IMG/VR virus record: IMGVR_UViG_3300005941_000003 | Coordinates: 124,001-188,000 of that record | Length of the DNA stretch: 64,000 nt | Strand: one strand, 5' to 3' | Shown here: positions 31,386 to 49,235 of the stretch, in pieces | How the letters are laid out: each line of letters opens with the position of its first letter | Position numbering within the stretch: position 1 is the stretch's first letter | Position numbers and translations under genes: made by a program | Notes under the pieces: generated by a model | Database searches by the model: none | What the model was told of the DNA's origin: nothing | What the model saw: only the letters and a program-made list of their open reading frames with translations

Positions 31386-31400
31386 CACAAGTGATGCAAG

Positions 31401-34501: not shown

Positions 34502-34509
34502 GGTTGTAA

Positions 34510-35361
34510 ATGGAAGAATGGCGTAAAAATATAGGAGCGGATGATGAATATTTTTTAAATTCATGTCCGGTTGACACTTATGATAACCCAAATTTGGGAT
34601 CGGAAAATAGAAGTATACGTGTTCGCTGGTATCCATCCGATAGCAAAGACAACTATATAGAATCTGGAAATGCATATACAATCGATAGTGTAGATTATGA
34701 TTTAAATAAACATGGGTTTCGGTGTGACGAGTTCGATGACATACGTGATAGTAAAAATAAAAAACTGATTGTGTTCGGATGCAGTAATACTTTTGGTATA
34801 GGCTTACCTGAACATCATATTTGGCCATATGAAGTAAAAAGATTACTTGAAAAAAAATACAACGAGAAGATCGATTTAATAAATCTTGCTATGCCAGGTA
34901 CTGGTTCGGACGATACAGTGCGCGTAATTAGTATGTTGGGTGACAGCTTTCATCCTAATTTTGTATGCTGCTTTACCCCACCTGTGTTTAGAAAAACTTA
35001 TACTGACCATAGCGGTAAGATATTTAATTATTTGCTATCTAATCAATATAACAAAAATTATCATGACTCGGATTGGAAACGAGTAAATTCTATCGGAGAA
35101 GCAATGGTGGATATATCTCCGCAATCTTTTTATTACGGTCAATATGTTGCAGAAAGTTTAGTTCGCACCTATGCAAAATTAAATAATGCCACCCATAAAA
35201 TAATAACAACTGCACATTACTTGGATGATATGATTGCTACATATGACATAGATAAAAATGAAGGCCCATGGAAATCTAAAGCAAGAGATTCTATGCACTA
35301 CGGTAGACACTTTCATAAGATGTTGGCAATTAAATTTATAGAAGGTTTGTTTAATGAGTGA
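34510..35361 (+). CDS. SGNH/GDSL-like hydrolase or acyltransferase (#1)
   Basis: NKHGFR, VFGCSNTFG, INLAMPG and DSMHYG (DxxH) motifs. Confidence 0.7.
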   Translation: MEEWRKNIGADDEYFLNSCPVDTYDNPNLGSENRSIRVRWYPSDSKDNYIESGNAYTIDSVDYDLNKHGFRCDEFDDIRDSKNKKLIVFGCSNTFGIGLPEHHIWPYEVKRLLEKKYNEKIDLINLAMPGTGSDDTVRVISMLGDSFHPNFVCCFTPPVFRKTYTDHSGKIFNYLLSNQYNKNYHDSDWKRVNSIGEAMVDISPQSFYYGQYVAESLVRTYAKLNNATHKIITTAHYLDDMIATYDIDKNEGPWKSKARDSMHYGRHFHKMLAIKFIEGLFNE

Positions 35362-36598
35362 TACATTTTGCGTTTTACCATGGTTGCATTTAGCATCGCA
35401 CCCGCATGGGGGTATAACATTATGTTGCAATGCAAATCATGAATATGGTGTTTCTAGGTCTAGGAACAAAACATCAAACTCTAATAACAACCCTCGCAGC
35501 ACTGATGGTGATCAATTCCTTGATTTAAAAAATCAGAGCATACAAGAAATAATGAACGGTGATACCTTTAAAGAAGTTAGACTGCAAATGCTAGAGGGTA
35601 AAAAACCATACGCATGTTTACGTTGCTACAAAGAAGAATCTATTGGTATTGTAAGCAAGCGTGTGAAAGAAAACAGAGAATATCCACATTTTACAATTGA
35701 ACAGGCAAAATCATTAACTGCACCAGACGGTACGATTGCCAATATAAATTTAGAATTTGTTGAACTTAGACTAGGTAACATTTGTAATGTTAAATGTAGA
35801 ACTTGCAACCCATGGAGTAGTTCAAAATGGATATCAGACTATCAAAAGTTAAGAGAAGAATATCCTGATCTGGGAGAATTCAATAAAGATCACAACCAGT
35901 TTGATTGGCCAGAACAAGAGAAATTTTGGGAAGATTTGTTTGAGCATACAAAAGATGCAAAGGTATTTTACATCAATGGCGGTGAACCTACGTTGATTAA
36001 AGAACACTTCAAGTTCTTGCAACGGATGATCGATGCCGGTAGAACTAACGTATGTCTACGTTATAACATTAATATGACAAACATGAATGAAGAAATCATA
36101 GAAATATGGAAACAGTTTGATGACATAGATATAGGTTTCAGCATCGATGATCTTAGTGACAGAAACGAATATATTAGAAATCCAACTAAATGGGAAGATG
36201 TTATGTCAACTGTTGATATGTTACTTCCACACAGATGTGATATACAATTCAGCATAACACAAACTGTTAGTTGGATGAACTTCCCATATCTTGGTGAGTT
36301 CTATGAATGGGCAAGTGGCCTAGGTATATATGTACACCATAATATGGTTAACGATCCGAAAATATTCTCTCCTAATGTACTACCGTTAGAATATCGTAAA
36401 GATGTAATAAAAAGACTGTCAAACATATTACCTAATGACAAAATAAATGCATTAAGGCAGTTTGAACAAAACGAAACGGATATAGAACTTTTACGCAGAG
36501 CAATAAACTACACCGATTCTTTAGACAGAATGCGCAGAGAAAAGTTCGATGTGGTGTTTCCAGAATTATCGTTTTTGAGAAAATTATATGAAAAATGA
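35354..36598 (+). CDS. Radical SAM protein with N-terminal Twitch-type domain (#4)
   Basis: FCVLPW...LCC...CLRC; CNVKCRTC; NGGEPT. Confidence 0.92.
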   Translation: MSDTFCVLPWLHLASHPHGGITLCCNANHEYGVSRSRNKTSNSNNNPRSTDGDQFLDLKNQSIQEIMNGDTFKEVRLQMLEGKKPYACLRCYKEESIGIVSKRVKENREYPHFTIEQAKSLTAPDGTIANINLEFVELRLGNICNVKCRTCNPWSSSKWISDYQKLREEYPDLGEFNKDHNQFDWPEQEKFWEDLFEHTKDAKVFYINGGEPTLIKEHFKFLQRMIDAGRTNVCLRYNINMTNMNEEIIEIWKQFDDIDIGFSIDDLSDRNEYIRNPTKWEDVMSTVDMLLPHRCDIQFSITQTVSWMNFPYLGEFYEWASGLGIYVHHNMVNDPKIFSPNVLPLEYRKDVIKRLSNILPNDKINALRQFEQNETDIELLRRAINYTDSLDRMRREKFDVVFPELSFLRKLYEK

Positions 36599-37457
36599 AT
36601 TTAGTTTTCTATCTGGTCCGGGCGGCAGGCGAGACATAGAACATAGTGAGAATCCAAATAGACATTGGTACAAAATAGATGACTTCTATAACAATACCTT
36701 ACAGACTAGATCGCAAATCACGAATTTAGATGAATTATATAATAAAAAGATTATAATCGTTGTTGGAGATAGTTTTACATTTGGAGATGGCGTTTATTAC
36801 ATTGATACATATGCCCACCTTTTGCATACTGATTTCTTCAATAAAGAAGACTATGTAGTAATAAATGTAGGTGTACCGGGTATATCGAATGACCGAATAA
36901 TACAAATAACACAAAATTGGGTTAATGAATTTTCGTCCCAAATCGAATGTATAATTGTGGGAATGTCATTCTTATCTAGAAGATCATACTTTTTTGATAA
37001 CGAATATACGCGTGACCATAATAACGACATCTACACAATGGAAAAATCTGATGTGAATACATACAACTTTAATCCTTCTACGACAGTTCCGACAACTAGA
37101 AACGGTTTACCTATTCGTGATAAGTACAATGCGTTTCTGGAACTAAACACTCGTATAAATGATTACAGAGAGTTTGAAAAAAATTTATTGCTATTAAAGT
37201 ATATTTCAATAGTATACAACATAAAAATATATTGGTGGGGCTGGTTGAATTTAATGTTCACGAAACACGACAGAGAGTTTCTAATAAGTACATTTGATTT
37301 TAACACAATGAGATACATAAACGTAGATGATATAACCGACCAGTTAGAGACCATATCATCGGATGATCGACACTGGAATCCGCGCGGTCATCGCCGCGTA
37401 GCAGATTACATAATAAAGTTTTTAAATGATGACTACTGTAAACAATTCACTCTTTAG
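36588..37457 (+). CDS. SGNH/GDSL-like hydrolase or acyltransferase (#2)
   Basis: VVGDSFTFGDG, INVGVPGISN and DDRHWN..GH motifs. Confidence 0.75.
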   Translation: MKNEFSFLSGPGGRRDIEHSENPNRHWYKIDDFYNNTLQTRSQITNLDELYNKKIIIVVGDSFTFGDGVYYIDTYAHLLHTDFFNKEDYVVINVGVPGISNDRIIQITQNWVNEFSSQIECIIVGMSFLSRRSYFFDNEYTRDHNNDIYTMEKSDVNTYNFNPSTTVPTTRNGLPIRDKYNAFLELNTRINDYREFEKNLLLLKYISIVYNIKIYWWGWLNLMFTKHDREFLISTFDFNTMRYINVDDITDQLETISSDDRHWNPRGHRRVADYIIKFLNDDYCKQFTL

Positions 37458-38613
37458 AGGTACCGGAGATTCACCATGGTGGTATTACATGTCAAAGGTG
37501 TACAATTTGAATTTGGAATTCTCTGACGTTTCTCCTCTGTGTATCTATGAACCGAATATATCACAAGAGTTGGGCAATCACGGTATAAGCATTGTAAAAG
37601 ACGGCAGCGTAGTAGATATACTACCTGACAATAGTAAAGTCATAATTAGCACGGTGCAGGAACCTATATCTGCCTTAGGTAAATTCAAATATCATGAAAA
37701 CGTAGATATACCTAATGTCTTGGTATCTAATGGCGCAAATACATCTAACGTGTGTTTTGTATCAGGTGACTTTTTCGTCAACGAATTCAACAATACTGAT
37801 ATGAAAACGTTTTTTGTTCCTGGGTGGAATCATTTATTCTGGGACGAAAAGGCAGAACCCATCGATTTACAAACTCGTTCATATGACCATTTGTTTTTAA
37901 GTTTCAATCGTATACACAAGCCGCACAGAATGTATTTTATGTGCAGACTACATGAATTAAAACTCTTAGAACGTAACTTAGTTAGTTGTGCTGATATTAT
38001 CGATGGTGAAACATTTGAGCAACATATGACTTGGATATACAATGACAAGAACGAATACCTTAACATATATGATCCAAACAATCTAATAGATATAGAAAAG
38101 TTGAAAAGTATTGCATCTGATATACAAACATCATTGCCGTATGTACTAGATGTATCGAACTTTCAAGAAAATGGATGTTTTGAAAGCGATACATTTAATA
38201 CTAGTTTACCATTCTATCAGAATAGCTTCATGAGTGTGATCACTGAAAGCAATGCTGTAGGTCCCGGATGCTATATATCGGAGGCTATATTTAGACCATT
38301 TGTTTTCATGCAGCCATTTTTAACAGTTGCGCAACCTAGAACTTTACAAGTGTTGCGAGAATGGGGGTTTGATGTATTTGATGACTTATTTGACAATAGC
38401 TATGACTTAGAACCCGATATGTTTAAACGTACAGAGATGGTACTAGAACAAATACAAAAGTTTTCACAACTTACACCAGAACAACTTAAAAAAATAACAC
38501 TTGATTTAGAACCAAGATTGTTGTATAATCATAACAGATATTACAGTAATGAATTCAAACAAATTAGTGCAAGTTATTTTAAAGATGTTTTGGCGTGGCT
38601 AGATGAAAAGTAA
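37426..38613 (+). CDS. Glycosyltransferase-like protein, 'TEKT' family (#2)
   Basis: FLSFNR..KPHR and VITES...ISEAIFRP....QPF...LREWGFDVFDDLFDNSYD. Confidence 0.5.
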   Translation: MMTTVNNSLFRGTGDSPWWYYMSKVYNLNLEFSDVSPLCIYEPNISQELGNHGISIVKDGSVVDILPDNSKVIISTVQEPISALGKFKYHENVDIPNVLVSNGANTSNVCFVSGDFFVNEFNNTDMKTFFVPGWNHLFWDEKAEPIDLQTRSYDHLFLSFNRIHKPHRMYFMCRLHELKLLERNLVSCADIIDGETFEQHMTWIYNDKNEYLNIYDPNNLIDIEKLKSIASDIQTSLPYVLDVSNFQENGCFESDTFNTSLPFYQNSFMSVITESNAVGPGCYISEAIFRPFVFMQPFLTVAQPRTLQVLREWGFDVFDDLFDNSYDLEPDMFKRTEMVLEQIQKFSQLTPEQLKKITLDLEPRLLYNHNRYYSNEFKQISASYFKDVLAWLDEK

Positions 38614-38989
38614 AAAACTATCACCTGACGTATTCGAGGACCATCGCGGAGTTATTCTTAGCTTTCCGCTTGATGTGAATGATTCACCTGTGGTCGAATA
38701 CAACCTAATGATAACATTAAAAGGCGATGAGCGCGGTTATCACTATCATCCACATTTTGATGAGTACATGATAGTTGTTGATGGGGAATGCTTATTCAAA
38801 GAATTTTCATCAGATGGTGATCACAAAGAAATGATAATGCGTGAAGGTGACAGCATTAAAATACCGACCGGCACTGCACATACATTTACTGCATTAACTG
38901 ATTTTAAATTTGTTAGTCTACTAACTAAGCGTTGGGATGACAGCGTTCCGCCAATTGTTAAAGTTAACAATAACGGAGAACCGTTATGA
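38603..38989 (+). CDS. Cupin-fold protein (NDP-sugar isomerase/epimerase-like, FdtA/RmlC-like)
   Basis: FEDHRG, RGYHYHP...E and IP.G.AH motifs. Confidence 0.75.
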   Translation: MKSKKLSPDVFEDHRGVILSFPLDVNDSPVVEYNLMITLKGDERGYHYHPHFDEYMIVVDGECLFKEFSSDGDHKEMIMREGDSIKIPTGTAHTFTALTDFKFVSLLTKRWDDSVPPIVKVNNNGEPL

Positions 38990-39885
38990 TCAAGTATATG
39001 GATTTCATCGTTGGTATAACATTTAAGAATGGATATGAGGTATTCATACGTCCATACGATACCGAACTTAATAGAACGTTCATAGAAAAATCAAATTTTA
39101 AAAAATTAGATAAACCATTATATTATCAGCTAGACACAACATATGTTGGGTTTTCGGATAGACAAATATCTTTGATAGAGAACAAAGAAGAAATAAAAAA
39201 AGAAAGTATAGAACGAATCATAAAATCATTTAATGATCTAAATATGGAGTTACATCCTGCACTAGTTAGGGGCGAACTTACATTAGAAGATTGTAATGAA
39301 ATACATCGTATCTTTACTACAAACTTTTTAGAGTTAAGACACAACCGACCTCCATCTGAAATAACAGTTTTGAATGAAACATTACAAGGTATTAATCACG
39401 GCGTTCATGATTATGAAAGTGTGTTACATAGTGAAAATTACATGGAATGCGACGAACTGCCTAGAACAATACTTGTGGGATATGAAATATGGGATCAAAT
39501 GGGAGAGTTTGCGTACAACGTACCCAATACATATGATCGTACAGAACTAGCTGATTTATACGACCATGCTGATGTTTTTTACTGGGATGATTGCAGGCTT
39601 GGTAGAAACTTTGCAACTGCTTGGTATATGGGCGATGATCCTATGGCTTGGGACGTTGCTGATATAGATGCAATTGTTCCTATTTTTAAACTAGGTAACA
39701 ATAAGATAAAAAGACTTTATGGTGATACAAAATTTTTAGATTGGCTAGCAAAGGGTAACTATGATTTTACTGTACCATTCAAAGATTTACCTTTTGGAAA
39801 AATCATAAATCCAATTGAATTCACTAATGAAACTGTTACTAATATGTACAGACCTACAGAGATAAAAATATATGAATCCATTTGA
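38986..39885 (+). CDS. Hypothetical protein
   Basis: ATGA-coupled 299-aa ORF; no motif I can assign. Confidence 0.65.
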   Translation: MIKYMDFIVGITFKNGYEVFIRPYDTELNRTFIEKSNFKKLDKPLYYQLDTTYVGFSDRQISLIENKEEIKKESIERIIKSFNDLNMELHPALVRGELTLEDCNEIHRIFTTNFLELRHNRPPSEITVLNETLQGINHGVHDYESVLHSENYMECDELPRTILVGYEIWDQMGEFAYNVPNTYDRTELADLYDHADVFYWDDCRLGRNFATAWYMGDDPMAWDVADIDAIVPIFKLGNNKIKRLYGDTKFLDWLAKGNYDFTVPFKDLPFGKIINPIEFTNETVTNMYRPTEIKIYESI

Positions 39886-40480
39886 ATACGTACATGAGTT
39901 TGAACGACAGGTAGCAGAATACGCAGGAGCACCTTATGGTATAGCAACCGACTGTTGCAGTCATGCTATATTCCTAAGTGCAATGTATTACAAACTCAAA
40001 CATGGTACTCCGGAAAAAGTCACACTTCCTACTCACACATATGTGAGTGCAGCAATGCAATTGCGCCATGCAGGTTACAATATCACATTCGAAGATTTTG
40101 AATGGGAAGGTGCGTACACTATAGAACCTACAAATATTGTTGATGCTGCCCCACGCTTTACTAAAGGTATGTATGTTCCCGGAACATACCACTGTGTGAG
40201 TTTTCAATATAAGAAAATTCTAAGTACAATTAAAGGCGGTATGATACTAACTGACGACGAAGAATTTTACAAATGGGCGCAACGTGCAACACATGATGGA
40301 AGAGACATGTCGTTGCCATACGAACAAGATACAATAACGATGCTTGGATATCATATGTTTATGACACCAGAGACCGCATTAATGGGACTCGAAAAGATGA
40401 AAACTATCCCAGACTTCAACAAAGATATTGCTGGTAGTTATACATACCCAGATATTAGCTATACAAATGGACTAAATTAA
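39872..40480 (+). CDS. Short DegT/DnrJ/EryC1-family PLP aminotransferase
   Basis: FERQVAEY.GA.Y..A, VDAA and SFQYKK.L..IKGGMILTDD motifs; only 202 aa. Confidence 0.8.
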   Translation: MNPFEYVHEFERQVAEYAGAPYGIATDCCSHAIFLSAMYYKLKHGTPEKVTLPTHTYVSAAMQLRHAGYNITFEDFEWEGAYTIEPTNIVDAAPRFTKGMYVPGTYHCVSFQYKKILSTIKGGMILTDDEEFYKWAQRATHDGRDMSLPYEQDTITMLGYHMFMTPETALMGLEKMKTIPDFNKDIAGSYTYPDISYTNGLN

Positions 40481-41673
40481 TGGCACACATAAAAGAAATA
40501 ACAGAATGTCGCAGTTGCGGAAGCAGCGAGTTTACAACAGTATTCGATATGGGCGACTTGAAAATCAATGCGTTTATGGCAGAACCGAATACAGATATTG
40601 GTACAGCACCGCTAACTTTGTTACATTGTTTTCATTGTGACCTAGTTCAACTGTCACATACAGTACGTGAAGAAGACCTTTATAAAAATTATTGGTACCT
40701 AAGCAGACTTAATAAGAAGATTGTAGACAATCTACAAAGTATCACAGTTGCAGCACAGAAACATGTGTCACTTTCAGATGGTGATATCGTTTTAGATATT
40801 GGTGCCAATGATGGTACTCTGTTGAGTTTTTATTCAGAGAACGTGATCAAAGTAGGATGTGATCCTGCGCAAAATATCAAGAGCGAACTTGAGAAAAACT
40901 GCGACATAACTATAAGTGATTTCTTTACTAAAGAAACTTATCGAAGCGCAGTAGGTAGCAAGAATGTAAAAGTTGTAACTACTATCGCTATGTTCTATGA
41001 CCTAGACAATCCAAATAAATTTGTTCAAGATATCAAGAGCATCCTTGCAGATGACGGTCTGTGGATTTGTCAGCTTATGACTGCTAGACCAATGCTTGAT
41101 ACAAACGATATCGGAAACGTAATCCATGAACATATCGAATACTATTCTTATAAAGCACTTGTGAATCTACTTGAACGTAATGGTCTAGAAATTTATGATC
41201 TAGTAGAAAACGATATTAATGGTGGTAGTTATCAGTTGTATATTCGTCATCTATCTCAAGGTTCTATGGAATTCGAAGAAGACTGTTCACAAGAACGTTA
41301 TGTTGAATGGCAGCGTAACATGGAAATCAACCGTGAGAAAACTATGAACTTCTTGCGAAGCGAAGTTGCAAATGGTAAAAAAGTGTATATCATGGGCGCA
41401 AGTACAAAAGGTAACACTATCATGCAGTACTACGGACTTGATGGCGATATCATTTCTGGCGCGGCAGAAATACACCCAGATAAGATAGGAAAATATCTTG
41501 TTGGTAGTAGTATACCAATTGTCCACGAAGATGAAGCAAAAGAAAAAGCAGATTACTTCTTGGTATTCCCATTCCACTTTAAAGACATATTTGTAAATAA
41601 GATTTTAAAGGATTGGATTACAGAGGGCGGCAAGCTAGTATTTTGTACACCAACATTTGAGGTAATCGGGTAA
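40480..41673 (+). CDS. NDP-hexose C-methyltransferase (TcaB9/NovU/EryBIII-like)
   Basis: Zn site CRSC...CFHC.LVQL, LDIGANDG.LL, HEHIEYYS and GASTKGNT. Confidence 0.9.
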   Translation: MAHIKEITECRSCGSSEFTTVFDMGDLKINAFMAEPNTDIGTAPLTLLHCFHCDLVQLSHTVREEDLYKNYWYLSRLNKKIVDNLQSITVAAQKHVSLSDGDIVLDIGANDGTLLSFYSENVIKVGCDPAQNIKSELEKNCDITISDFFTKETYRSAVGSKNVKVVTTIAMFYDLDNPNKFVQDIKSILADDGLWICQLMTARPMLDTNDIGNVIHEHIEYYSYKALVNLLERNGLEIYDLVENDINGGSYQLYIRHLSQGSMEFEEDCSQERYVEWQRNMEINREKTMNFLRSEVANGKKVYIMGASTKGNTIMQYYGLDGDIISGAAEIHPDKIGKYLVGSSIPIVHEDEAKEKADYFLVFPFHFKDIFVNKILKDWITEGGKLVFCTPTFEVIG

Positions 41674-42428
41674 TGTTAAGTAAAGAACCACATAGCGAGT
41701 TAAACAATCTATTTCGTCGCAATTGGTTGCGCGACGATCTAGAAACCATGTATACTATATCACCTATATCAACGATGAGTGCGTCTCGTATGCAAGCAGT
41801 CATGGATGCAATTCGATATGTAAAAGCAAAGGACATACCGGGAGACATCGTAGAATGTGGTGTATTCATGGGCGGTAACATTGCCCTCGCACTTGCAGAA
41901 ATGTACAATTTGGATTTAGATAGAAAGTTTTGGGCATATGATACATTCGAAGGTGTACCCAGAAAAGAATTGATCGACACTGATAGAGAGATTGAAATAC
42001 ATAGCTCAGGTGCAGGAGAGAGTGTGGAACGTTGGTATAACGAAGAAGACCAATGGTGCTACTGTCCCAAAGATGGGGTAATAGAAAATGTTGCCAATGT
42101 CATTCCAAAACTTATCCCAGACTTATACGATGCAAATCGTATGATCGACAAGAAAGTAAACTTTGTTGAAGGTTCAGTGTTAGATACTATTCCTAATATA
42201 CTACCAGAAAAAATATCGTTCATACGTTTAGATATGGACATTGCCGTACCAACTAAACATGCACTTGAACATTTGTGGGATTTAGTATCAATAGGTGGGG
42301 TAATGCACATCGATGATTACAATATGTTTGGCGGAGTTCATGAAGCAGTAGATGAATTCTTTAAAGATAAATTTGTTTACATTCAAGAGATTGATTATGC
42401 TGCATCTGCTATTGTGAGGCTTTCGTAA
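41673..42428 (+). CDS. TylF/MycF/NovP-family O-methyltransferase
   Basis: GDIVECGV..GG, YDTFEG, IRLDMD and GG...IDDY motifs. Confidence 0.9.
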   Translation: MLSKEPHSELNNLFRRNWLRDDLETMYTISPISTMSASRMQAVMDAIRYVKAKDIPGDIVECGVFMGGNIALALAEMYNLDLDRKFWAYDTFEGVPRKELIDTDREIEIHSSGAGESVERWYNEEDQWCYCPKDGVIENVANVIPKLIPDLYDANRMIDKKVNFVEGSVLDTIPNILPEKISFIRLDMDIAVPTKHALEHLWDLVSIGGVMHIDDYNMFGGVHEAVDEFFKDKFVYIQEIDYAASAIVRLS

Positions 42429-42955
42429 TGGTATTAAAAACAAGTGATAGTATGATTGGTAAAACTGCCAGATACATTGGTAATATGGAAGAGGGCGAAG
42501 TATGCCTAGTGATGATCATATGTAATCATTGTCCGTATGTTCTATTCAGAATGCCACAGATATCACAATTAGTTAAAGACTACAAAGATTCGGTTCGTAT
42601 AGTTGCAGTCAACAGTAACGATGCTTCACCAACAACAGAAGATTCACACCCAGAAGATGCCCCAGAGTTTATGCCAGAGTTCATAGAGGAATGGGATTTG
42701 CAATGTGATTATATATTTGATGAAGATCAAAGTATTGCAAAAGACTATGGTGCCGTATGTACACCAGAATTCTACGTTGTAGATAGAGAAGGTATTATAG
42801 TATATCACGGCGAATTAGACCCATCGCATATATCTAACAGATTAATGCCAACTGGAAGTAGTCTTCGTCACGCAATTGACTTGGCTCTAGTAAATAAAAC
42901 TATCGATTGGGACCCTAACCCAAGTTTTGGATGTAGTGTAAAGTGGAAAAACTAA
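42428..42955 (+). CDS. Thioredoxin-family / peroxiredoxin-like redoxin
   Basis: ICNHCPYV, VNSND, DEDQ.IAK.YGA.CTPEF and GCSVKWK motifs. Confidence 0.85.
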   Translation: MVLKTSDSMIGKTARYIGNMEEGEVCLVMIICNHCPYVLFRMPQISQLVKDYKDSVRIVAVNSNDASPTTEDSHPEDAPEFMPEFIEEWDLQCDYIFDEDQSIAKDYGAVCTPEFYVVDREGIIVYHGELDPSHISNRLMPTGSSLRHAIDLALVNKTIDWDPNPSFGCSVKWKN

Positions 42956-43750
42956 ATGAAGATAGGTATAGTAGGAAGTGAAGGTGTAGTAGGTCGCGCA
43001 TGTACTGCAGGCTTTGCGCGGCTTGGATACAATGTTATCAAGCATGATATTAGTTTAATGACTAAACTACTTTCTGTGTTAGAAGCAGAGATTGTTTTTA
43101 TATGTGTGCCTACACCAAGCGATTCTACAGGGAAGTGCGACACCAGTATTGTAGAAAGCGTTGTTGCAGAATTGTATAGTTTAAACTATACAGGGGTTGT
43201 AGCTATTAAATCTACAGTAGAACCGGGTACTACGCAACGATTGATAGAACAGTATGATGACCGTATTGTATTTGTTCCTGAGTTTTTAAAAGAACGAAGT
43301 GCGGAATATGACTTCGTGTTCGACCATAGACTTCTACTTGTCGGAACAGACAATGTAAATTACTACTACCTAGTACAGCGTTCACATGGTAACCTACCAA
43401 AAGATATTATGCGCGTGTCTCCGACAGAAGCAGAATTGATGAAGTATTATCACAATACATTCAATGCAACACGTATTGTGTTCGCCAATGTTATGTATGA
43501 GATTGCAGAAAAAATGGGGGTGTCATATGACAAGATCAAGGAAGCGTTCTTGAAAAACAATGACATGCCAGATGAATATCTTGATGTAAAACCAGAACTG
43601 CGAGGTTATGGTGGAGCATGTCTACCAAAAGATGTTCTCGCAATGCAACGCGCTTGTGAACAACTTGGATTACCTCACCACCTATTTGAAGCAATAGATA
43701 AAGAGAACAGACTGTTTGAAACGACAGTATTTGATGGGATGAGAAAATGA
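42956..43750 (+). CDS. UDP-glucose/GDP-mannose dehydrogenase family protein, short form
   Basis: FICVPTP, IKSTVEPGTT, PEFLKE, EAELMKY..N and GYGGACLPKD motifs; lacks the C-terminal domain. Confidence 0.85.
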   Translation: MKIGIVGSEGVVGRACTAGFARLGYNVIKHDISLMTKLLSVLEAEIVFICVPTPSDSTGKCDTSIVESVVAELYSLNYTGVVAIKSTVEPGTTQRLIEQYDDRIVFVPEFLKERSAEYDFVFDHRLLLVGTDNVNYYYLVQRSHGNLPKDIMRVSPTEAELMKYYHNTFNATRIVFANVMYEIAEKMGVSYDKIKEAFLKNNDMPDEYLDVKPELRGYGGACLPKDVLAMQRACEQLGLPHHLFEAIDKENRLFETTVFDGMRK

Positions 43751-44637
43751 AAATACTTGTTACAGGCGCAGCGGGATTTATAGGCAATGCGATAGCAAAA
43801 GAACTTAAAGGATCGGACCATGAAGTTATTTTAACTGATATACTCATGCCAGATGAATTACATGGTCATGCTTATACATACGCAGATTTAACAAATCAAG
43901 ATGCAGTTAATAACTTACCGGATGTTGACGTTGTATATCACATGTGTGCATATAATAATACGGCACACTTCTATTCTAAACCAATGAGTGTCATTGATTC
44001 TACGCTTACCCCTACAATATACTTACTGCAACGTTATAAGTCAATAAAAAAATTCATATACGCAAGTAGCAGTGAGATATATGCAGGTGCTATACAACTC
44101 GGTATATCCGATATACCAACACCAGAAGTAAATGTAGGGATAATTAATGGCATTGACAACCCACGTTGGAGTTATGCAGGTAGTAAACTCATGGGAGAAA
44201 TACTAGTACACGCCGCGCACGTCGAGCATGGGCTAAATTATGCAATCATTCGTTATCACAACGTATACGGTAAACGCCAGAAAGCACACTTTATACCAGA
44301 GTATGCAGAGCGTATACAAAACGATGACCGCACATTATACGGCGCGGATCAAACACGTGCATTCTTGTACATAGATGATGCTGCGAAATTGACAGCCATG
44401 GTTGCAGACGTATTAGAAAATGATACTATACATATTGGTAACCCAAAAGAGATTACTATAAAACTGGTGGCGGCGATGATACGTGATATTCTTTTAGTAC
44501 ATACCAAACCAGAATACAAAGATGCACCTGAAGGTAGTGTAGATAGAAGATGTGCAGATATTTCTAAACTATTAGAACTATTCCCAGATTTTAAATTCAC
44601 AGGGCTAGATGCGGGTCTTAGAAAAACTCTGCTATAA
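43747..44637 (+). CDS. NAD-dependent epimerase/dehydratase (extended SDR)
   Basis: VTGAAGFIG, ASSSEIY, YAGSK (YxxxK) and RYHNVYG motifs. Confidence 0.9.
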   Translation: MKILVTGAAGFIGNAIAKELKGSDHEVILTDILMPDELHGHAYTYADLTNQDAVNNLPDVDVVYHMCAYNNTAHFYSKPMSVIDSTLTPTIYLLQRYKSIKKFIYASSSEIYAGAIQLGISDIPTPEVNVGIINGIDNPRWSYAGSKLMGEILVHAAHVEHGLNYAIIRYHNVYGKRQKAHFIPEYAERIQNDDRTLYGADQTRAFLYIDDAAKLTAMVADVLENDTIHIGNPKEITIKLVAAMIRDILLVHTKPEYKDAPEGSVDRRCADISKLLELFPDFKFTGLDAGLRKTLL

Positions 44638-44645: not shown

Positions 44646-45773
44646 ATGAAATGCCCACTAGTTACCAATCATCTAGAAATAAACTCAAGCGGCGAATTCA
44701 AACCGTGTTGTATTAGTTCGAAGCGATTTGCTATTGACAATAAGATAGCAAATGCAGATACCCATACCATAGATGATATAATACAACACAGTGATCGTAA
44801 CGAGTGGATTAAAAATTTTGATGCAAACTATGAAACTGATTGTAGACAATGCTATGAAGTAGAACGTAGTGGTGGTGAAAGTAAGCGCATCAGAGAACTT
44901 AGAGATTGGCGAACTAACTATCATTTCAAATCTGATACATTGCAATCTCTTGATTTGAAGATGGGTAATACCTGTAATCTCGCTTGTGCAATATGCGCAC
45001 CAGATAGCAGCAGTAAATGGGCATCAATATACAAACAACTTGGTTACGATACTGGTATACGACTACAACGTTGGCCAGAACGTGATGAATTTTGGGAACA
45101 ACTCAACCAACACGCCCAAAACATACAAAAGATAGAACTTGCTGGCGGCGAACCGTTTATGATTAAGAAGCAAGAAATACTAATCAACTTCTTAATAGAA
45201 CGAGACTTAGCAAAGAATATAGATATAACTTGGTTTACAAACTGTACTATATGGCCAGAGAATATTGTGAAGCACTTTGATAAGTTCAAACAAGTTCGTA
45301 TAATGCTTAGTATCGACAATACGGGTGAACAATTCGAATACATACGATACCCTGCAAAATGGAATGAAGCATATGATATATTCTTGAAGTTCAAGGAGTT
45401 ACATAGTCGCAAGATAGTAAATCTAGGCATATCACATTCTATAGGATTACTAAATGTATGGAGATTACCAGAGTTTCACGCGTGGTGCAGACAGCACGAA
45501 GTATCTGTATTCAACAATCTTATAATGAATCCACTAAGTGCAAAAGACTTACCGAAAGAGTTTAAATTGCGAGTAGCAGAAAAGTTGAGTAAGTGTAGCG
45601 ACCCCTCATACCAACATAACCCAGTTGTTGGAGAAAACAATTGGCTCATACAGTTTATGATGGGAGACAGTGATAACAATCTACAGCATCTCACTGAAAA
45701 AGTTATACCATCTCGTCCGACGATAGATATATATGAGGCGTTTCCTGAATTGAAAGGAATGTTAAATGTATGA
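44646..45773 (+). CDS. Radical SAM protein with N-terminal Twitch-type domain (#5)
   Basis: KCPL...PCC...CRQC; CNLACAIC; AGGEPF. Confidence 0.92.
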   Translation: MKCPLVTNHLEINSSGEFKPCCISSKRFAIDNKIANADTHTIDDIIQHSDRNEWIKNFDANYETDCRQCYEVERSGGESKRIRELRDWRTNYHFKSDTLQSLDLKMGNTCNLACAICAPDSSSKWASIYKQLGYDTGIRLQRWPERDEFWEQLNQHAQNIQKIELAGGEPFMIKKQEILINFLIERDLAKNIDITWFTNCTIWPENIVKHFDKFKQVRIMLSIDNTGEQFEYIRYPAKWNEAYDIFLKFKELHSRKIVNLGISHSIGLLNVWRLPEFHAWCRQHEVSVFNNLIMNPLSAKDLPKEFKLRVAEKLSKCSDPSYQHNPVVGENNWLIQFMMGDSDNNLQHLTEKVIPSRPTIDIYEAFPELKGMLNV

Positions 45774-46560
45774 TACTCTTTGGCTAGGTTGTTCACATAG
45801 TTCTGGTAGTTATTGTAAAGATACTGGAGAACTTATAGACCAATCTCATAGTATTCCATCCGTTCTTGCGACAAAACTAAATCAACGTTGGAAAAGCATT
45901 TCATTTCCAGGTGATGGGGTGATGAAATATGCAGAAGCAGTGAAGTTGCTTGATGAAAACAAGTTATTATCCAATTTTAGAAATATAATCATACAGCGCA
46001 CTTATGAGCCTCGTATGACGTTTTTTAATGATAGCGATTATATTTACGATAGAATACTAGAATACGTAAACGACCCAAATCGATTTGAAACTATTATATC
46101 AGTAAGACCACCAACCGAACGTACTTTTTCTCTTTTCGCACATCAGAACTACGATCAGTATCATTCTAAATTTGCAGGTAAAGAAATAGAATTAATAGAT
46201 ATGTTTGAAAATATATCTCACAGTGTTGATCCCAGAGAAAGCACCACAGAGACTACACAGTATCCAAGTCTTTGGGTTGATGTGCATTATGATTATATAA
46301 AATATACTGCGGATAAAAACAATTGCAAATTGTATATGTTTGATTACGTGGGCAGTTTTAGAAACCAAAATCGTAGATGGAAAATTAACAAACCATTTAA
46401 ACGCACACTTATTAATGGTGATCAAGATTTTGTTTTCCACCATCTTACAGAACAAAATAGATTAGATTTGTTAGCGTCTGCACAGCACCCTACACACGGT
46501 GCAGTTGATTTGCTGGTAGACATATTATATAAAGAGTTGAATGATGAAGAATATAAATGA
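45766..46560 (+). CDS. SGNH-like protein (#3)
   Basis: WLGCSHSSG, SFPGDG and C-terminal AQHPT motifs. Confidence 0.55.
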   Translation: MYDTLWLGCSHSSGSYCKDTGELIDQSHSIPSVLATKLNQRWKSISFPGDGVMKYAEAVKLLDENKLLSNFRNIIIQRTYEPRMTFFNDSDYIYDRILEYVNDPNRFETIISVRPPTERTFSLFAHQNYDQYHSKFAGKEIELIDMFENISHSVDPRESTTETTQYPSLWVDVHYDYIKYTADKNNCKLYMFDYVGSFRNQNRRWKINKPFKRTLINGDQDFVFHHLTEQNRLDLLASAQHPTHGAVDLLVDILYKELNDEEYK

Positions 46561-47734
46561 CGCGTTTTGTATTGCACCATGGATGCATATGCATGTGGAA
46601 CCAGATGGTGAAGTGCAACTATGCTGTGCATCAAACTGGAAACACGAACATCAGCGCAGTCTCGGCAATCTAAACGAAAGCAGCCCAGAAGAAATCTGGA
46701 ATAACTCACAGTATCGTATGGTGCGTAAGAATATGCTAGAGGGTCGTAAGATGCCTCAGTATTGCTCACCTTGTTATGATCGTGAAGCAGGTGCTATTAA
46801 CCAAACAGAGAGACAGCGTTTCAATCGCGAGTTTGCAAATACATTTGATTTAGTTCCTACTACACTGAGTGACGGTACACTAGATACACTAAAGCTAAAG
46901 TATCTAGACATTCGATTTAACAATCTATGTAATCTAAAGTGTCGTACATGTGGTCCTGATTGGAGTACAAGCTGGGCAAACGAAATGGGTATTGAGAAGC
47001 CACTACTATACAACAACACGTGGCGTAAGTTACTACCGTATCTAGATCAATTAGAGAAAGTATACTTTGCTGGCGGTGAACCACTTATGACCCCAGAACA
47101 CTACGATTTCTTAGAACAACTTGTCGAGATTAACCCAAACATTGAATTGTTATACACATCAAACTTTAGTAGACTATCGCTAAAGAACCGTCATGTGTTA
47201 GATTACTGGCCTAAGTTTAAACTTGTAAGTGCTATTGCTAGTATAGATCATTACGGTGAACATGCAGCATATGTTCGCACAGGCAGTGACTATAATACGA
47301 TAGTAAAAAATATAAAAGAGTTACAGAACGCCGGGCATCGCAACATTCAACCAGCAGTAACAAGTGTGTATTCTATATACAATGCAACCCGTCTCGGTGA
47401 TTTCGTTATTCGACTATTCGAAGACGGTGTTATACAAACTATGGATCAGATTGTATTCAACATACTGGTTAACCCAGATTATCAAATGGCAACAATTATA
47501 CCAGAAAGTGCGCTAGAATTTGCTATAGCTAACACACAAAAAGGTATAGATTATCTGATATCACATGGGCACAACCCACAGAAATTACAGAGCGCAATAG
47601 ACTGGTTGACATCAAATTGGAACTATGATAAGATCAAATTCAACAAGTTTGTAGAATACAATCTAGACTTAGATACTAAGCGCGGCACTGACTTCTATAC
47701 TATGTATCCAGAGTTCGGCGAGTGTAGGGATTAG
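46541..47734 (+). CDS. Radical SAM protein with N-terminal Twitch-type domain (#6)
   Basis: FCIAPW...LCC...CSPC; CNLKCRTC; AGGEPL. Confidence 0.92.
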   Translation: MMKNINDAFCIAPWMHMHVEPDGEVQLCCASNWKHEHQRSLGNLNESSPEEIWNNSQYRMVRKNMLEGRKMPQYCSPCYDREAGAINQTERQRFNREFANTFDLVPTTLSDGTLDTLKLKYLDIRFNNLCNLKCRTCGPDWSTSWANEMGIEKPLLYNNTWRKLLPYLDQLEKVYFAGGEPLMTPEHYDFLEQLVEINPNIELLYTSNFSRLSLKNRHVLDYWPKFKLVSAIASIDHYGEHAAYVRTGSDYNTIVKNIKELQNAGHRNIQPAVTSVYSIYNATRLGDFVIRLFEDGVIQTMDQIVFNILVNPDYQMATIIPESALEFAIANTQKGIDYLISHGHNPQKLQSAIDWLTSNWNYDKIKFNKFVEYNLDLDTKRGTDFYTMYPEFGECRD

Positions 47735-47803
47735 CGCCGCGCGGGGCGAAGTTCGAGCGGCACCAAGATAATCCCGGAACAAGCCATCGGAGATGGCTTG
47801 GTT
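47735..47803. other. GC-rich intergenic element with hairpins
   Basis: gccgc/gcggc (47736-47761) and the perfect caagccatc-gga-gatggcttg hairpin (47780-47800), followed by aaaatttttt. Confidence 0.6.
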
Positions 47804-47823
47804 AGGAAAATTTTTTGGAGCAT

Positions 47824-47843
47824 TAAGTGCGCACTTATAAATA
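47824..47843 (+). promoter_or_regulatory. 14-bp palindrome overlapping a late promoter TATAAATA that lies 5 nt before ATG 47849
   Basis: taagtgcgcactta (47824-37); TATAAATA (47836-43)-tatct-ATG. Confidence 0.7.
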
Positions 47844-47848
47844 TATCT

Positions 47849-49108: not shown

Positions 49109-49175
49109 GGGTAAGTTGAGGCATAGTGTTACGGAAAACCAAAAAAATGCTTGCGGGATGGCCTCAGATTCGCGG

Positions 49176-49204
49176 AGTATAGCACCTGAAAAATAAAAGT
49201 TCAA
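49176..49204 (-). promoter_or_regulatory. Sigma70-like promoter pointing antisense into rSAM #7
   Basis: Minus strand TTGAAC, 17 nt, TATACT with extended -10 TG; no substantial minus-strand ORF follows. Confidence 0.45.
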
Positions 49205-49235
49205 CTCTTTTTTTACTAGAAGTGGAAAAAATATT

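What the first reader, a model, noticed from the sequence alone, without database searches (positions are those of the whole stretch)
38603..44637. Antibiotic-type branched and methylated sugar cassette in a phage
Seen: cupin, DegT aminotransferase, NDP-hexose C-methyltransferase, TylF O-methyltransferase, dehydrogenase and SDR epimerase in one coupled run. Established: aminotransferase + C-MT + cupin epimerase build 3-amino-3-C-methyl sugars (vancosamine type), and C-MT + NovP-type O-MT + cupin build noviose. Inference: the phage makes a C-methyl-branched, O-methylated, possibly amino sugar or uronate. No RmlA/RmlB is evident, so the precursor probably comes from the host.
Basis: partly seen in the sequence, partly recalled or inferred. 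Interest (0 to 1): 0.6.

Follow-up and report, generated by a model that had tools for sequence, protein, structure and literature searches.

The report
Phage branched-sugar cassette with miniature enzymes
A marine jumbo phage carries a conserved set of sugar-tailoring genes, two of them unusually short versions of standard enzymes. The set probably makes a methyl-branched amino sugar for a phage-made glycan, and it sits in a ~60 kb island packed with uncharacterised radical SAM enzymes.

Summary

- Two more ORFs lie in the run: a 299-aa unknown and an invariant CNHC thioredoxin/PRX-like protein.
- The "DegT" (202 aa) and the "dehydrogenase" (264 aa) are miniature forms. They keep the catalytic residues but lack whole domains, and they belong to large marine metagenomic families.
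- The cassette lies inside a ~60 kb island with 14 paralogues of an uncharacterised N-terminal-twitch radical SAM family and three phage-type GT-B glycosyltransferase candidates.

Six genes (cupin, mini-DegT, C-methyltransferase, thioredoxin-like, mini-UGDH, SDR) co-occur in 20-23 of 23 related phage loci in shuffled order. TylF is accessory.

The SDR carries the Ser-x-Glu and PRW-x-Y motifs of ArnA-type decarboxylases and dehydratases, not of epimerases. The cupin has a metal site and is not RmlC-like.

Best reading: a nucleotide-sugar pathway from a uronate through a 4-keto sugar to a C-methylated, transaminated and sometimes O-methylated sugar, passed to phage glycosyltransferases. The acceptor is probably in the cytoplasm and may be virion protein. 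The vancosamine and noviose analogies are not supported. I file it as a new variant of virus-encoded glycan biosynthesis.

The parts
38603..38989 (+). 128-aa single-domain cupin with a conserved HxHxxxxE...H metal site. Candidate metal-dependent keto-sugar epimerase or isomerase; an oxygenase role is not excluded.
   Evidence: Cupin_2 E 2.6e-9. Weak hits below cut-off to WbuC, Polysacc_synt_C and RmlC. PDB ranking. Motif conserved in 16 unique relatives. Present in 23/23 close loci.
38986..39885 (+). 299-aa protein of unknown fold. It belongs to a divergent family that flanks the mini-DegT in related phages.
   Evidence: No Pfam, NCBIfam or PHROG hit. Atlas model pLDDT 0.35. Family alignment has invariant N104, H107, N137, H141, E144. 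Profile search against PDB found nothing.
39872..40480 (+). Mini-DegT: a 202-aa PLP-fold sugar-aminotransferase-like protein. It has the large domain only, minus one beta-alpha unit, and no C-terminal domain.
   Evidence: PF01041 at 78 bits, in two stretches only. AF2 pLDDT 96.2. Foldseek top hits are all sugar aminotransferases or dehydratases, TMq 0.64-0.74. Invariant D91, S110, F111, K115. At least 152 relatives; the 120 listed are mostly 196-256 aa.
40480..41673 (+). Full-length NDP-4-keto-sugar C-methyltransferase (TylC3/TcaB9/MtmC type).
   Evidence: Three Pfam domains. 4rv9 at E 1e-40 over residues 5-392; TcaB9 at E 1e-17. Four Zn cysteines and the HEH motif are conserved. 84 viral loci encode relatives.
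41673..42428 (+). TylF/NovP-family sugar O-methyltransferase, an accessory gene.
   Evidence: PF05711 at 101.6 bits. NovP, MycF and CalS11 are the solved relatives; the DxD and DD acidic motifs align. Present in only 9 of 23 close loci.
42428..42955 (+). 175-aa thioredoxin-fold (AhpC/TSA-Redoxin) protein with invariant CNHCPY and SFGCSVKWK motifs. Role unknown.
   Evidence: PF00578 E 2.6e-11, PF08534 E 2.7e-10. 67-80% identical across relatives. Present in 21/23 close loci.
42956..43750 (+). Mini-UGDH: a 264-aa nucleotide-sugar 6-dehydrogenase-like protein. It has a shortened NAD domain and the central catalytic domain, but no C-terminal UDP-binding domain.
   Evidence: TIGR03026 at 152 bits (cut-off 189.8), covering profile positions 68-302 of 413. 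Aligned to E. coli Ugd it lacks about 26 residues after beta-2 and the last ~100. Invariant PEFLKER, K..N and YGGACLPKD. At least 2932 relatives; the top 120 are nearly all 257-276 aa.
43747..44637 (+). 296-aa extended SDR with Ser-Ser-Glu and PRW-x-YxxxK motifs. Candidate 4-keto-sugar generator (ArnA/UXS-like decarboxylase or 4,6-dehydratase).
   Evidence: PF01370 E 2.3e-38. PDB hits include UXS1 and UDP-GlcA or UDP-Glc epimerases at near-equal scores. Motif comparison with E. coli RfbB, Gmd, ArnA, GalE and Fcl. Sister to the ArnA C-terminal domain in the tree at 94/89, with a long-branch warning.
37426..38613 (+). 395-aa protein of a family so far seen only in viruses, with a GT-B glycosyltransferase fold. 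Candidate transferase for the cassette's product. It overlaps the cupin gene by 11 nt.
   Evidence: AF2 pLDDT 77.6. All top Foldseek and VIA matches are GT-B enzymes, Z 10-12.8. Relatives are fused to an SDR (705 aa) or a UGDH (788 aa) in other phages.
31981..33096 (+). Paralogue of the GT-B candidate (371 aa).
   Evidence: blastp 24.5% identity, E 3.6e-10 to the 37426 protein.
57965..59188 (+). Second paralogue of the GT-B candidate (407 aa).
   Evidence: blastp E 6.5e-6 to the 37426 protein.
56736..57965 (+). Full-length (409 aa) UDP-glucose/GDP-mannose dehydrogenase-family protein. Possible supplier of the uronate precursor.
   Evidence: PF03721, PF00984 and a weak PF03720 hit. TIGR03026 at 149.8 bits. 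70-74% identical orthologues in many related loci, and directly after the C-methyltransferase in L019.
28034..31385 (+). Two N-terminal-twitch radical SAM paralogues (605 and 519 aa).
   Evidence: NF033640 at 302.8 and 306.1 bits, cut-off 170.
33083..36598 (+). Two N-twitch radical SAM paralogues (472 and 414 aa) flanking a 283-aa unknown.
   Evidence: NF033640 at 320.6 and 367.8 bits.
44646..50441 (+). Four N-twitch radical SAM paralogues (375, 397, 436 and 401 aa) plus a 264-aa unknown, starting 8 nt after the SDR gene.
   Evidence: NF033640 at 247-384 bits. Junction.
59185..59952 (-). Fusion of an RfaE-domain-II-like nucleotidyltransferase with a phosphomannose-isomerase-type cupin. Phage-encoded sugar activation.
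   Evidence: PF01467 E 1.5e-16 and PF01050 E 1.2e-23. TIGR02199 and TIGR01479.
51368..53115 (+). Bud32/APH-like kinase (236 aa) followed by a MobA-like NTP_transf_3 nucleotidyltransferase (348 aa). A possible kinase-plus-nucleotidyltransferase activation pair.
   Evidence: The kinase hits are weak.

Best explanation
The run is a functional, conserved phage module that tailors a nucleotide-activated sugar in the infected cell's cytoplasm.

**Proposed order (inferred, not shown)**
1. A UGDH-type dehydrogenase oxidises C6 of an NDP-hexose to the uronate. This is the 264-aa mini-UGDH, the full-length paralogue at 56736, or both.
2. The adjacent SDR, which has the Ser-x-Glu/PRW-Tyr signature of ArnA-type enzymes, makes a 4-keto sugar. 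The likeliest route is oxidative decarboxylation to a 4-keto-pentose. The alternative is 4,6-dehydration.
3. The full-length C-methyltransferase adds a methyl branch next to the keto group.
4. The metal cupin epimerises or isomerises the keto sugar.
5. The 202-aa mini-DegT transaminates the keto group.
6. In some phages, TylF O-methylates a hydroxyl.

The product would be a C-methyl-branched amino sugar, optionally O-methylated. It would be handed to the phage-specific GT-B glycosyltransferase candidates (37426 and two paralogues). The neighbouring N-twitch radical SAM enzymes may tailor it further.

The island holds no membrane export or lipid-carrier genes. It sits next to baseplate and tail genes, and its content varies between close relatives. 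The acceptor is therefore most likely cytoplasmic, and virion protein is the best guess.

**Confidence by part**
- About 0.75 that this is a working NDP-sugar C-methyl-branching module.
- About 0.3 for the specific uronate to 4-keto-pentose route.
- About 0.35 for a virion acceptor.
For: - **Enzyme identities and catalytic residues** are listed under 'parts'.
- **Selection, not decay.** The six core genes co-occur in 20-23 of 23 close loci at 40-100% identity, with conserved lengths and shuffled order. The mini-DegT model has pLDDT 96. The miniature families hold at least 152 and at least 2932 members of matching length.
- **UGDH-SDR coupling.** The two genes overlap by 4 nt here. In a distant phage contig the mini-UGDH is again flanked by SDRs inside a GT2/GT4/DegT/FdtA glycan cluster.
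- **SDR class.** It shares Glu with RfbB, Gmd and ArnA, and PRW-x-Y with ArnA only. The phage's other SDR is GalE-like, SSSSVYG. It is sister to ArnA in the tree.
- **Transferase link.** The 37426 protein has a GT-B fold. Its relatives are fused to UGDH or SDR domains in other phages.
- **No export machinery.** No multi-pass membrane protein is encoded in the island. The phage has no Glycos_transf_4 and no GT2.
- **Other phages.** C-methyltransferase, mini-DegT and mini-UGDH relatives sit in glycan clusters in other marine phages.
- **Radical SAM context.** In bacterial genomes the commonest neighbours of the N-twitch radical SAM family, other than radical SAM genes themselves, are GT2 and PMT_2 glycosyltransferases.
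Against: - There is no biochemical, expression or virion data. No RNA run holds the sequence.
- The mini-UGDH lacks the domain that binds UDP, and the mini-DegT lacks the small domain, so their substrates may not be nucleotide sugars.
- SDR assignment by overall score is ambiguous. The best E. coli BLAST hit is GalE at 57 bits, against 53.5 for ArnA and RfbB. The tree join is flagged as possible long-branch attraction.
- The cupin resembles metal-dependent oxygenases at least as much as sugar epimerases.
- The GT-B assignment rests on fold only (Z 10-13).
- The thioredoxin-like protein and the 299-aa protein have no place in the scheme.
- The acceptor is a guess.
Confidence: 0.6

Rival explanations
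1. The cassette takes host dTDP-4-keto-6-deoxyglucose and makes a vancosamine-type 3-amino-3-C-methyl or noviose-type 5-C-methyl, 4-O-methyl 6-deoxyhexose.
For: The closest solved C-methyltransferases (MtmC, TcaB9) act on TDP-4-keto-6-deoxy sugars. NovP is the closest solved TylF relative. The phage has no RmlA, so a host precursor would be needed.
Against: No RmlC-type epimerase. No 2,3-dehydratase was found, though that control was uninformative. The cupin is a metal cupin. A conserved UGDH-SDR pair, with the SDR carrying decarboxylase/dehydratase motifs, would have no role. TylF is absent from most relatives.
Confidence: 0.15
2. DNA hypermodification. The tailored sugar is attached to phage DNA bases by the GT-B proteins, as T4 glucosylates hydroxymethylcytosine.
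For: VIA re-ranking puts T4 beta- and alpha-glucosyltransferases at or near the top for the 37426 model (Z 12.8 and 11.7). Distant mini-UGDH-like genes occur in Bacillus phage SP-15 and Campylobacter phage CP220, which I recall as having modified DNA. Phage glycosyltransferases that hypermodify DNA are documented (Pyle et al. 2024, as cited in PMC12619734).
Against: Many non-DNA GT-B enzymes score within 1-2 Z of the T4 enzymes. The 92%-complete genome has a single thymidylate-synthase-family gene, and it is a canonical ThyA (348.9 bits on the thym_sym equivalog), so no hydroxymethylase was found.
Confidence: 0.07
3. Host-surface remodelling. The sugar goes into host LPS or capsule during infection, for example to block superinfection.
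For: This is a long-standing idea for LPS-type genes in marine phages (my recollection). In bacteria, N-twitch radical SAM genes neighbour GT2 and PMT_2 glycosyltransferases.
Against: The island has no flippase, polymerase, priming phosphoglycosyl transferase or any multi-pass membrane protein. About 60 kb is a large investment for a lytic jumbo phage.
Confidence: 0.1
4. The short DegT and UGDH genes are decayed remnants, and the cassette is partly non-functional.
For: Both score below the curated full-length NCBIfam cut-offs and lack whole domains.
Against: Their lengths are conserved across hundreds to thousands of relatives, the catalytic residues are invariant, the AF2 confidence is high, and the frames are intact.
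Confidence: 0.03

Closest known systems
NDP-hexose 3-C-methyltransferases (MtmC, TcaB9, TylC3)
   Same: Same three-domain architecture, the same four Zn cysteines and His-Glu-His motif, and alignment along the whole length.
   Different: About 30% identity or less. It is encoded by a phage, with partners not seen in the antibiotic pathways. The sugar and nucleotide specificity are unknown.
Ugd-ArnA-ArnB route to UDP-4-amino-4-deoxy-L-arabinose in E. coli. From memory, the related uronate-derived C-methyl aminopentose routes of enediyne antibiotics such as maduropeptin are also comparable.
   Same: The same logic of a dehydrogenase, then an SDR with Ser-x-Glu and PRW-x-Tyr, then a DegT-fold aminotransferase.
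   Different: The dehydrogenase and aminotransferase are miniature forms. A C-methyltransferase, a metal cupin and a thioredoxin-like protein are added. There is no formyltransferase and no lipid-carrier steps. My literature search did not retrieve the maduropeptin sugar pathway, so that comparison is unverified.
TylF/NovP/MycF/CalS11 sugar O-methyltransferases
   Same: Pfam TylF well above cut-off; the acidic metal motifs align.
   Different: Accessory here, in only 9 of 23 relatives. Whether it acts before or after glycosyl transfer is unknown.
Virus-encoded glycan biosynthesis: glycan clusters of giant viruses (my recollection) and virion glycosylation in mycobacteriophages (Freeman et al. 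2023, cited in PMC12619734)
   Same: A virus carries its own nucleotide-sugar tailoring enzymes and glycosyltransferases.
   Different: I found no report of a phage cassette with a C-methyltransferase, of the miniature DegT or UGDH forms, or of an expanded radical SAM set. The acceptor here is unknown.
Twitch-domain radical SAM sugar enzymes such as BtrN (my recollection)
   Same: A radical SAM core plus one auxiliary-cluster Cys motif, in a sugar-gene context.
   Different: The twitch domain is N-terminal (NF033640). No solved structure matches by sequence. The family is uncharacterised and is present in 14 copies.

Membership tests
NDP-hexose C-methyltransferase (TylC3/TcaB9/MtmC) | Zn-ribbon N-domain + SAM Rossmann domain + C-methyltransferase C-terminal domain | tested here: met
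   PF08421 at 39.9, PF13489 at 46.8 and PF08484 at 88.7 bits, all above cut-off.
NDP-hexose C-methyltransferase (TylC3/TcaB9/MtmC) | Four Zn-binding cysteines and the catalytic His-Glu-His motif | tested here: met
   CxxC...CxxC and (I/C)HEH are conserved in 19 unique relatives and align to YHEH of 4rv9.
NDP-hexose C-methyltransferase (TylC3/TcaB9/MtmC) | SAM-dependent methylation of an NDP-4-keto sugar | not testable with these tools
   Needs an enzyme assay.
DegT/DnrJ/EryC1 sugar aminotransferase | PLP Schiff-base Lys, pyridine-N Asp and aromatic stacking residue | tested here: met
   Invariant K115 (SFxxKK), D91 and T56-Y57 in 40 family members.
DegT/DnrJ/EryC1 sugar aminotransferase | Two-domain fold-type I architecture of about 360-400 aa | tested here: not met
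   202 aa. Only profile positions 24-115 and about 185-261 of 360 are matched. The model covers the large domain only; TM normalised by the target is 0.34-0.42.
UDP-glucose/GDP-mannose dehydrogenase | Catalytic Cys in GGxCxxKD, with the Lys/Asn and PEFLxE motifs | tested here: met
   YGGACLPKD, KYYHN and PEFLKER are invariant.
UDP-glucose/GDP-mannose dehydrogenase | C-terminal UDP-binding domain (PF03720); score above the TIGR03026 cut-off | tested here: not met
   No PF03720 hit. 152.2 bits against a cut-off of 189.8. The alignment to E. coli Ugd ends about 100 residues before Ugd's C-terminus.
RmlC/EvaD-type NDP-sugar epimerase cupin | Match to dTDP_sugar_isom (PF00908 / TIGR01221) | tested here: not met
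   19.7 bits against a cut-off of 27; TIGR01221 gives 16.3 against 155.75. A metal-binding HxHxxxxE...H site is present instead.
Extended SDR of the 4-keto-forming class (ArnA/UXS decarboxylases, 4,6-dehydratases) | GxxGxxG, YxxxK, and Glu two residues after the catalytic Ser/Thr | tested here: met
   GAAGFIG, YAGSK and SSE are conserved in 13 relatives. E. coli RfbB (TDE), Gmd (TSE) and ArnA (TSE) have the Glu; GalE, Fcl and RfbD do not.
Extended SDR of the 4-keto-forming class (ArnA/UXS decarboxylases, 4,6-dehydratases) | Phylogenetic placement with decarboxylases rather than epimerases | tested here: inconclusive
   Sister to the ArnA C-terminal domain at 94/89, but flagged as a meeting of long branches. 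BLAST and HMM scores to GalE, RfbB, Fcl and ArnA are all similar. PDB scores for epimerases and UXS1 are within 4 bits.
TylF/NovP O-methyltransferase | PF05711 above cut-off; acidic metal-binding motifs | tested here: met
   101.6 bits against 23. LDMD and DDY align with NovP's MDGD and DDY.
Vancosamine (EvaA-E) or noviose (NovT/W/U/S) pathway | 2,3-dehydratase (EvaA), or RmlB plus an RmlC-type epimerase, alongside the C-methyltransferase | tested here: not met
   No PF00908 hit, with a valid control. No PF03559 hit, but the control rang nowhere, so that part is uninformative. No SDR with a TDE motif.
GT-B glycosyltransferase (protein at 37426) | Two Rossmann-like domains of the GT-B fold | tested here: met
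   All top Foldseek and VIA matches are GT-B enzymes, Z 10-12.8 over about 260-290 residues.
GT-B glycosyltransferase (protein at 37426) | Membership of a named CAZy/Pfam GT family, with donor-binding motifs | tested here: not met
   No Pfam or PHROG hit. The nearest Atlas cluster with a family is GT10 at a score of only 0.79.

The most novel reading that the evidence does not exclude
Marine jumbo phages carry a hypervariable ~60 kb glycan island that works like an O-antigen locus for the virion. It would be built from enzyme forms not known in cells:
- single-lobe DegT and UGDH enzymes that have lost their nucleotide-binding domains, and may act on non-nucleotide or protein-bound sugars, or borrow a partner subunit;
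- an invariant CxxC thioredoxin-like partner;
- a phage-specific GT-B family;
- about 14 paralogues of an uncharacterised N-terminal-twitch radical SAM family that perform radical tailoring of sugars, such as epimerisation, dehydrogenation or C-C chemistry.

The product would be a C-methyl-branched, amino, heavily tailored glycan.
Probability: 0.3. Interest if true: 0.85.

Novelty: new variant of a known kind. Interest (0 to 1): 0.62.

Why it matters
- **Branched sugars beyond bacteria.** If the scheme is right, phages make C-methyl-branched amino sugars. That chemistry is otherwise known from antibiotic pathways and a few bacterial surface glycans.
- **Minimal enzymes.** The 202-aa DegT and the 264-aa UGDH would define the smallest working versions of two textbook nucleotide-sugar enzyme folds. 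They are abundant in the ocean (at least 152 and at least 2932 relatives found) and have not been studied.
- **A handle on an unknown enzyme family.** The surrounding 14-copy N-twitch radical SAM expansion gives a tractable genomic context for finding out what that family does.
- **Phage surface variation.** Gene content and order change between close relatives. That pattern suggests diversifying selection on a phage-made glycan, which bears on host recognition and on how marine phages evade defences.

Tried and rejected
- **Thioredoxin-like protein with mini-UGDH.** Complex prediction returned 'no answer' (score 0.00). This is not evidence either way.
- **The 299-aa protein.** Pfam, NCBIfam, PHROGs, Atlas and a family-profile search of PDB sequences gave nothing usable.
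- **N-twitch radical SAM.** There is no sequence match to any solved structure and no literature on NF033640.
- **Literature.** Searches for phage C-methyltransferases, for jumbo-phage radical SAM clusters and for the maduropeptin sugar pathway returned nothing relevant.
- **Cultured phages.** blastn of the cassette against cultured phages found no match. The best protein matches are 36% identity for the C-methyltransferase and 33% for the mini-UGDH.
- **Genes upstream of the island.** PHROG scans of 21724-28030 and other unknowns gave only families of unknown function.
- **Lipid-carrier idea.** A membrane protein next to the phage's second SDR turned out to be ZitB-like, a cation transporter, and no Glycos_transf_4 was found.
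- **Alternative genetic code.** Not needed. Long intact ORFs read under table 11, with a coding fraction of 0.94.
- **First alignment for the genome scan.** It was too divergent and was redone.
- **Read laying.** Not used. Only contig-level DNA holders were listed, and no RNA run.
- **Large representative-protein search.** Not used. No claim here rests on the absence of relatives.

Full report
**What is there.**
The window is bases 124001-188000 of a 245,963-bp IMG/VR virus record. Its first 21 kb encode a head maturation protease, tail lysozyme/baseplate hub, baseplate wedge proteins and a 2912-aa protein. The 1435-aa wedge protein is 34-40% identical to those of jumbo myoviruses such as SCTP-2, Atu_ph07, CBB and PA5oct. 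A 342,181-bp record rated 92% complete carries the same cassette at 100% identity, so it is the same phage.

From 21724 to 50441 every long ORF is on the + strand. Promoter- and terminator-like sites are no more frequent there than in shuffled sequence.

**Gene by gene.**
- *Cupin (128 aa).* It is a Cupin_2 protein. Its hits to WbuC, the CapF-type Polysacc_synt_C domain and RmlC all fall below the curated cut-offs. It carries a classical HxHxxxxE...H metal site that is conserved in all relatives. Its best solved matches are metallo-cupins, ahead of RmlC and FdtA.
- *299-aa protein.* No match anywhere. Divergent relatives flank the mini-DegT in other phages.
- *DegT (202 aa).* It matches only two stretches of the 360-position profile. 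AlphaFold gives a very confident compact model, pLDDT 96.2. All of its top structural neighbours are sugar aminotransferases or dehydratases, including perosamine synthase, ArnB, ColD, CalS13, PseC and DesI, at TMq 0.64-0.74. These cover the PLP-binding large domain only. The Schiff-base Lys, the pyridine-binding Asp and the stacking Tyr are invariant in 40 family members.
- *C-methyltransferase (397 aa).* It is full length and convincing. It has three Pfam domains, scores E 1e-40 to the D-mycarose 3-C-methyltransferase 4rv9 over residues 5-392, and keeps the Zn cysteines and the HEH motif.
- *TylF protein.* It matches NovP and MycF.
- *175-aa protein.* It has an AhpC/TSA-Redoxin fold with invariant CNHCPY, CTPEFY and SFGCSVKWK motifs.
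- *Dehydrogenase (264 aa).* Aligned to E. coli Ugd, it lacks about 26 residues after beta-2 and the last ~100 residues, the C-terminal UDP-binding part. It keeps PEFLKER, the Lys/Asn pair and GGACLPKD.
- *SDR (296 aa).* It has GxxGxxG and YxxxK. It also has a Glu two residues after the catalytic Ser and a PRW motif before the Tyr. In an alignment with E. coli enzymes, the Glu is shared with RfbB, Gmd and ArnA, and PRW with ArnA only. GalE, Fcl and RfbD lack both.

**Is it real and selected?**
Using the C-methyltransferase as a probe, 84 viral loci encode relatives. In the 23 closest loci (66-100% identity), the counts are as follows; the shortfalls are at contig ends, and TylF, the GT-B candidate and the 299-aa protein are accessory.

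| Gene | Loci with it (of 23) |
|---|---|
| Cupin | 23 |
| Mini-DegT | 23 |
| Thioredoxin-like | 21 |
| Mini-UGDH | 21 |
| SDR | 20 |
| GT-B candidate | 16 |
| TylF | 9 |
| 299-aa protein | a few |

Gene order differs between relatives, and variable genes are interspersed. The short lengths are a family property. The 120 best mini-DegT relatives are mostly 196-256 aa, and the 120 best mini-UGDH relatives are nearly all 257-276 aa with only the N-terminal and central Pfam domains. At least 2932 mini-UGDH relatives score E<=1e-10. All are metagenomic and many are marine, including Tara samples. These are therefore working miniature enzymes, not pseudogenes.

**Context changes the picture.**
The cassette is one module of an island of about 60 kb, at G000 coordinates ~145-207 kb. 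In the 342-kb record the island wraps around the contig ends. The island holds:
- eight NF033640 'N-terminal twitch' radical SAM paralogues in the + strand run, a ninth on the - strand of the window, 13 in this record and 14 in the fuller record, plus about five other radical SAM genes;
- three paralogues of a 395-aa protein family so far seen only in viruses;
- a full-length UGDH;
- a HisC/CobD-like aminotransferase;
- a Bud32/APH-like kinase next to an NTP_transf_3 nucleotidyltransferase;
- a fusion of an RfaE-II-like nucleotidyltransferase with a PMI-type cupin.

I modelled the 395-aa protein at 37426, which overlaps the cupin gene by 11 nt (pLDDT 77.6). All its structural matches are GT-B glycosyltransferases. 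Relatives of it are fused to an SDR (705 aa) or to a UGDH (788 aa) in other phages, which ties the family functionally to nucleotide-sugar enzymes.

In more distant marine phage contigs, the mini-DegT, the mini-UGDH and a 54%-identical C-methyltransferase each sit in ordinary-looking glycan clusters. Those clusters contain GT2, GT4 or GT1 transferases, SDRs, full-length DegT, FdtA/RmlC-like cupins, acetyltransferases and sugar kinases. In L086 the mini-UGDH is again flanked by SDR genes.

**Mechanism.**
Shown: the enzyme families, their catalytic residues, their co-conservation and their coupling.

Inferred: the order of steps. The C-methyltransferase family needs a 4-keto sugar, and so does a DegT-type transaminase. 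The only candidate 4-keto generator is the cassette's SDR, because the phage's only other SDR is GalE-like, with SSSSVYG and best hits to 4-epimerases. Three things favour a Ugd-ArnA-ArnB-like route through a uronate and a 4-keto-pentose:
- the SDR's Glu and PRW motifs;
- its tree position next to the ArnA decarboxylase domain (94/89, but with a long-branch warning);
- its conserved coupling to a UGDH-type gene.

In that route, C-methylation and cupin-catalysed epimerisation or isomerisation would come before transamination. Overall similarity scores do not separate epimerase, dehydratase and decarboxylase, so a 4,6-dehydratase route to a 6-deoxyhexose remains open.

RmlA/GalU-type and RmlC-type genes are absent from the 92%-complete genome. 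The hexose precursor is therefore probably the host's, although the island has its own other nucleotidyltransferases.

**Acceptor.**
The island encodes no multi-pass membrane protein. The phage has no GT2 and no Glycos_transf_4. The one membrane protein next to the second SDR is a ZitB-like transporter. This argues against lipid-linked export to the host surface.

A DNA acceptor is raised by the T4 glucosyltransferases topping the VIA list. However, many other GT-B enzymes score within 1-2 Z of them. The only thymidylate-synthase-family gene is a canonical ThyA, so no hydroxymethyl-pyrimidine pathway was found.

A cytoplasmic protein acceptor is the best remaining guess, and virion protein is the likeliest. 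The reasons are the position beside the baseplate and tail genes and the locus variability. This is inference only. Virion glycosylation is documented in mycobacteriophages (Freeman et al. 2023, as cited in PMC12619734).

**The radical SAM family.**
NF033640 members have four conserved N-terminal cysteines, enough for one auxiliary cluster, ahead of the CxxxCxxC core. At least 7012 relatives were found, mostly metagenomic. There is no solved relative by sequence and no literature.

In bacterial genomes (Bacteroidota, Bdellovibrionota and others) the genes also occur as paralogue arrays. Among 119 neighbouring proteins, the commonest families other than radical SAM were GT2 (6), Glyco_tranf_2_3 (5), PMT_2 (4), PhyH (4) and ABC transporters (4). 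That is modest support for a role in glycoconjugates.

**Comparison and novelty.**
Each enzyme type is known, and virus-encoded glycan pathways are known. I found no description of the following:
- this conserved combination in phages (C-methyltransferase, metal cupin, CxxC thioredoxin-like protein, UGDH and an ArnA-like SDR);
- the miniature DegT and UGDH forms;
- the embedding in a radical SAM-rich island.

I therefore rate it a new variant of a known kind.

**Limits.**
Everything rests on sequence and predicted structure. No RNA run holds the region. The test for binding between the thioredoxin-like protein and the mini-UGDH gave no answer. The roles of the thioredoxin-like protein, the 299-aa protein and all the radical SAM enzymes remain open.

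Noticed in passing
window 28034-36598, 44646-50441, 59945-61144(-); G000 196-205 kb and 242 kb: There are 13 (14 in the 92%-complete record) paralogues of the uncharacterised N-terminal-twitch radical SAM family NF033640 in one phage, plus about five other radical SAM genes. They are 20-36% identical to each other, and all keep four N-terminal Cys plus CxxxCxxC.
   Followed up: partly
loci L116, L121, L145, L118, L122 (Bacteroidota MAGs/chromosomes): In bacteria the same radical SAM family also forms arrays of 3-7 paralogues. GT2, PMT_2, PhyH and ABC-transporter genes are the commonest neighbours.
   Followed up: partly
L093 (Bacteriovoracaceae UBA6144 contig) and at least 13 contigs of Elusimicrobia MAG MJ-2014_bin-0981 (L092, L094, L096, L098-L101, L104, L106-L109, L158): These 'bacterial' MAG contigs carry many N-twitch radical SAM genes. 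Those in L093 are 29-54% identical to this phage's individual paralogues. They may be mis-binned phage contigs, or a hint to the host.
   Followed up: no
window 51368-56065: A Bud32/APH-like kinase, an NTP_transf_3 nucleotidyltransferase, a conventional radical SAM/SPASM enzyme (54067) and a HisC/CobD-like PLP enzyme sit together. This looks like a LicA/LicC-style pathway that activates an amino-alcohol or phospho-substituent.
   Followed up: no
window 59185-59952 (-): An unusual fusion of an RfaE-domain-II-like nucleotidyltransferase with a phosphomannose-isomerase-type cupin.
   Followed up: no
window 12929-21667: A 2912-aa protein directly after the baseplate wedge gene, with only weak CBM_5_12 and flagellin-IN hits. 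It is a possible fibre and a possible glycan acceptor.
   Followed up: no
window 36588-37457: A 289-aa protein with a weak GDSL-like lipase/acylhydrolase hit (E 3.4e-4), conserved at 32-35% in the closest relatives. It could be a sugar O-acyl esterase or transferase.
   Followed up: no
G000 207055-207906 (-) (L085): A canonical thymidylate synthase gene abuts the far end of the island (348.9 bits on the thym_sym equivalog).
   Followed up: yes
G000 22690-24506 (-) (L166): A GalE-like SDR (SSSSVYG) overlaps a ZitB-like cation-diffusion transporter gene, far from the island.
   Followed up: partly
G001 (record of L002), ends of the contig: In the 342-kb record the island runs off the 3' end and resumes at the 5' end. 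This fits a circularly permuted or terminally redundant genome. G000 and G001 are two assemblies of one phage.
   Followed up: partly
Campylobacter phage CP220 14054-14704; Bacillus phage SP-15 129559-130251: Cultured phages that I recall as having modified DNA carry distant UGDH-like genes (27-29% identity). The CP220 annotation lists only NAD-binding and 6PGDH-like domains, so it resembles the mini form.
   Followed up: no
window 22448-26477: Two tandem pairs of paralogous unknown proteins (22448/23354 and 24758/25596). The second pair has homologues next to the cassette in L013 and L024.
   Followed up: no
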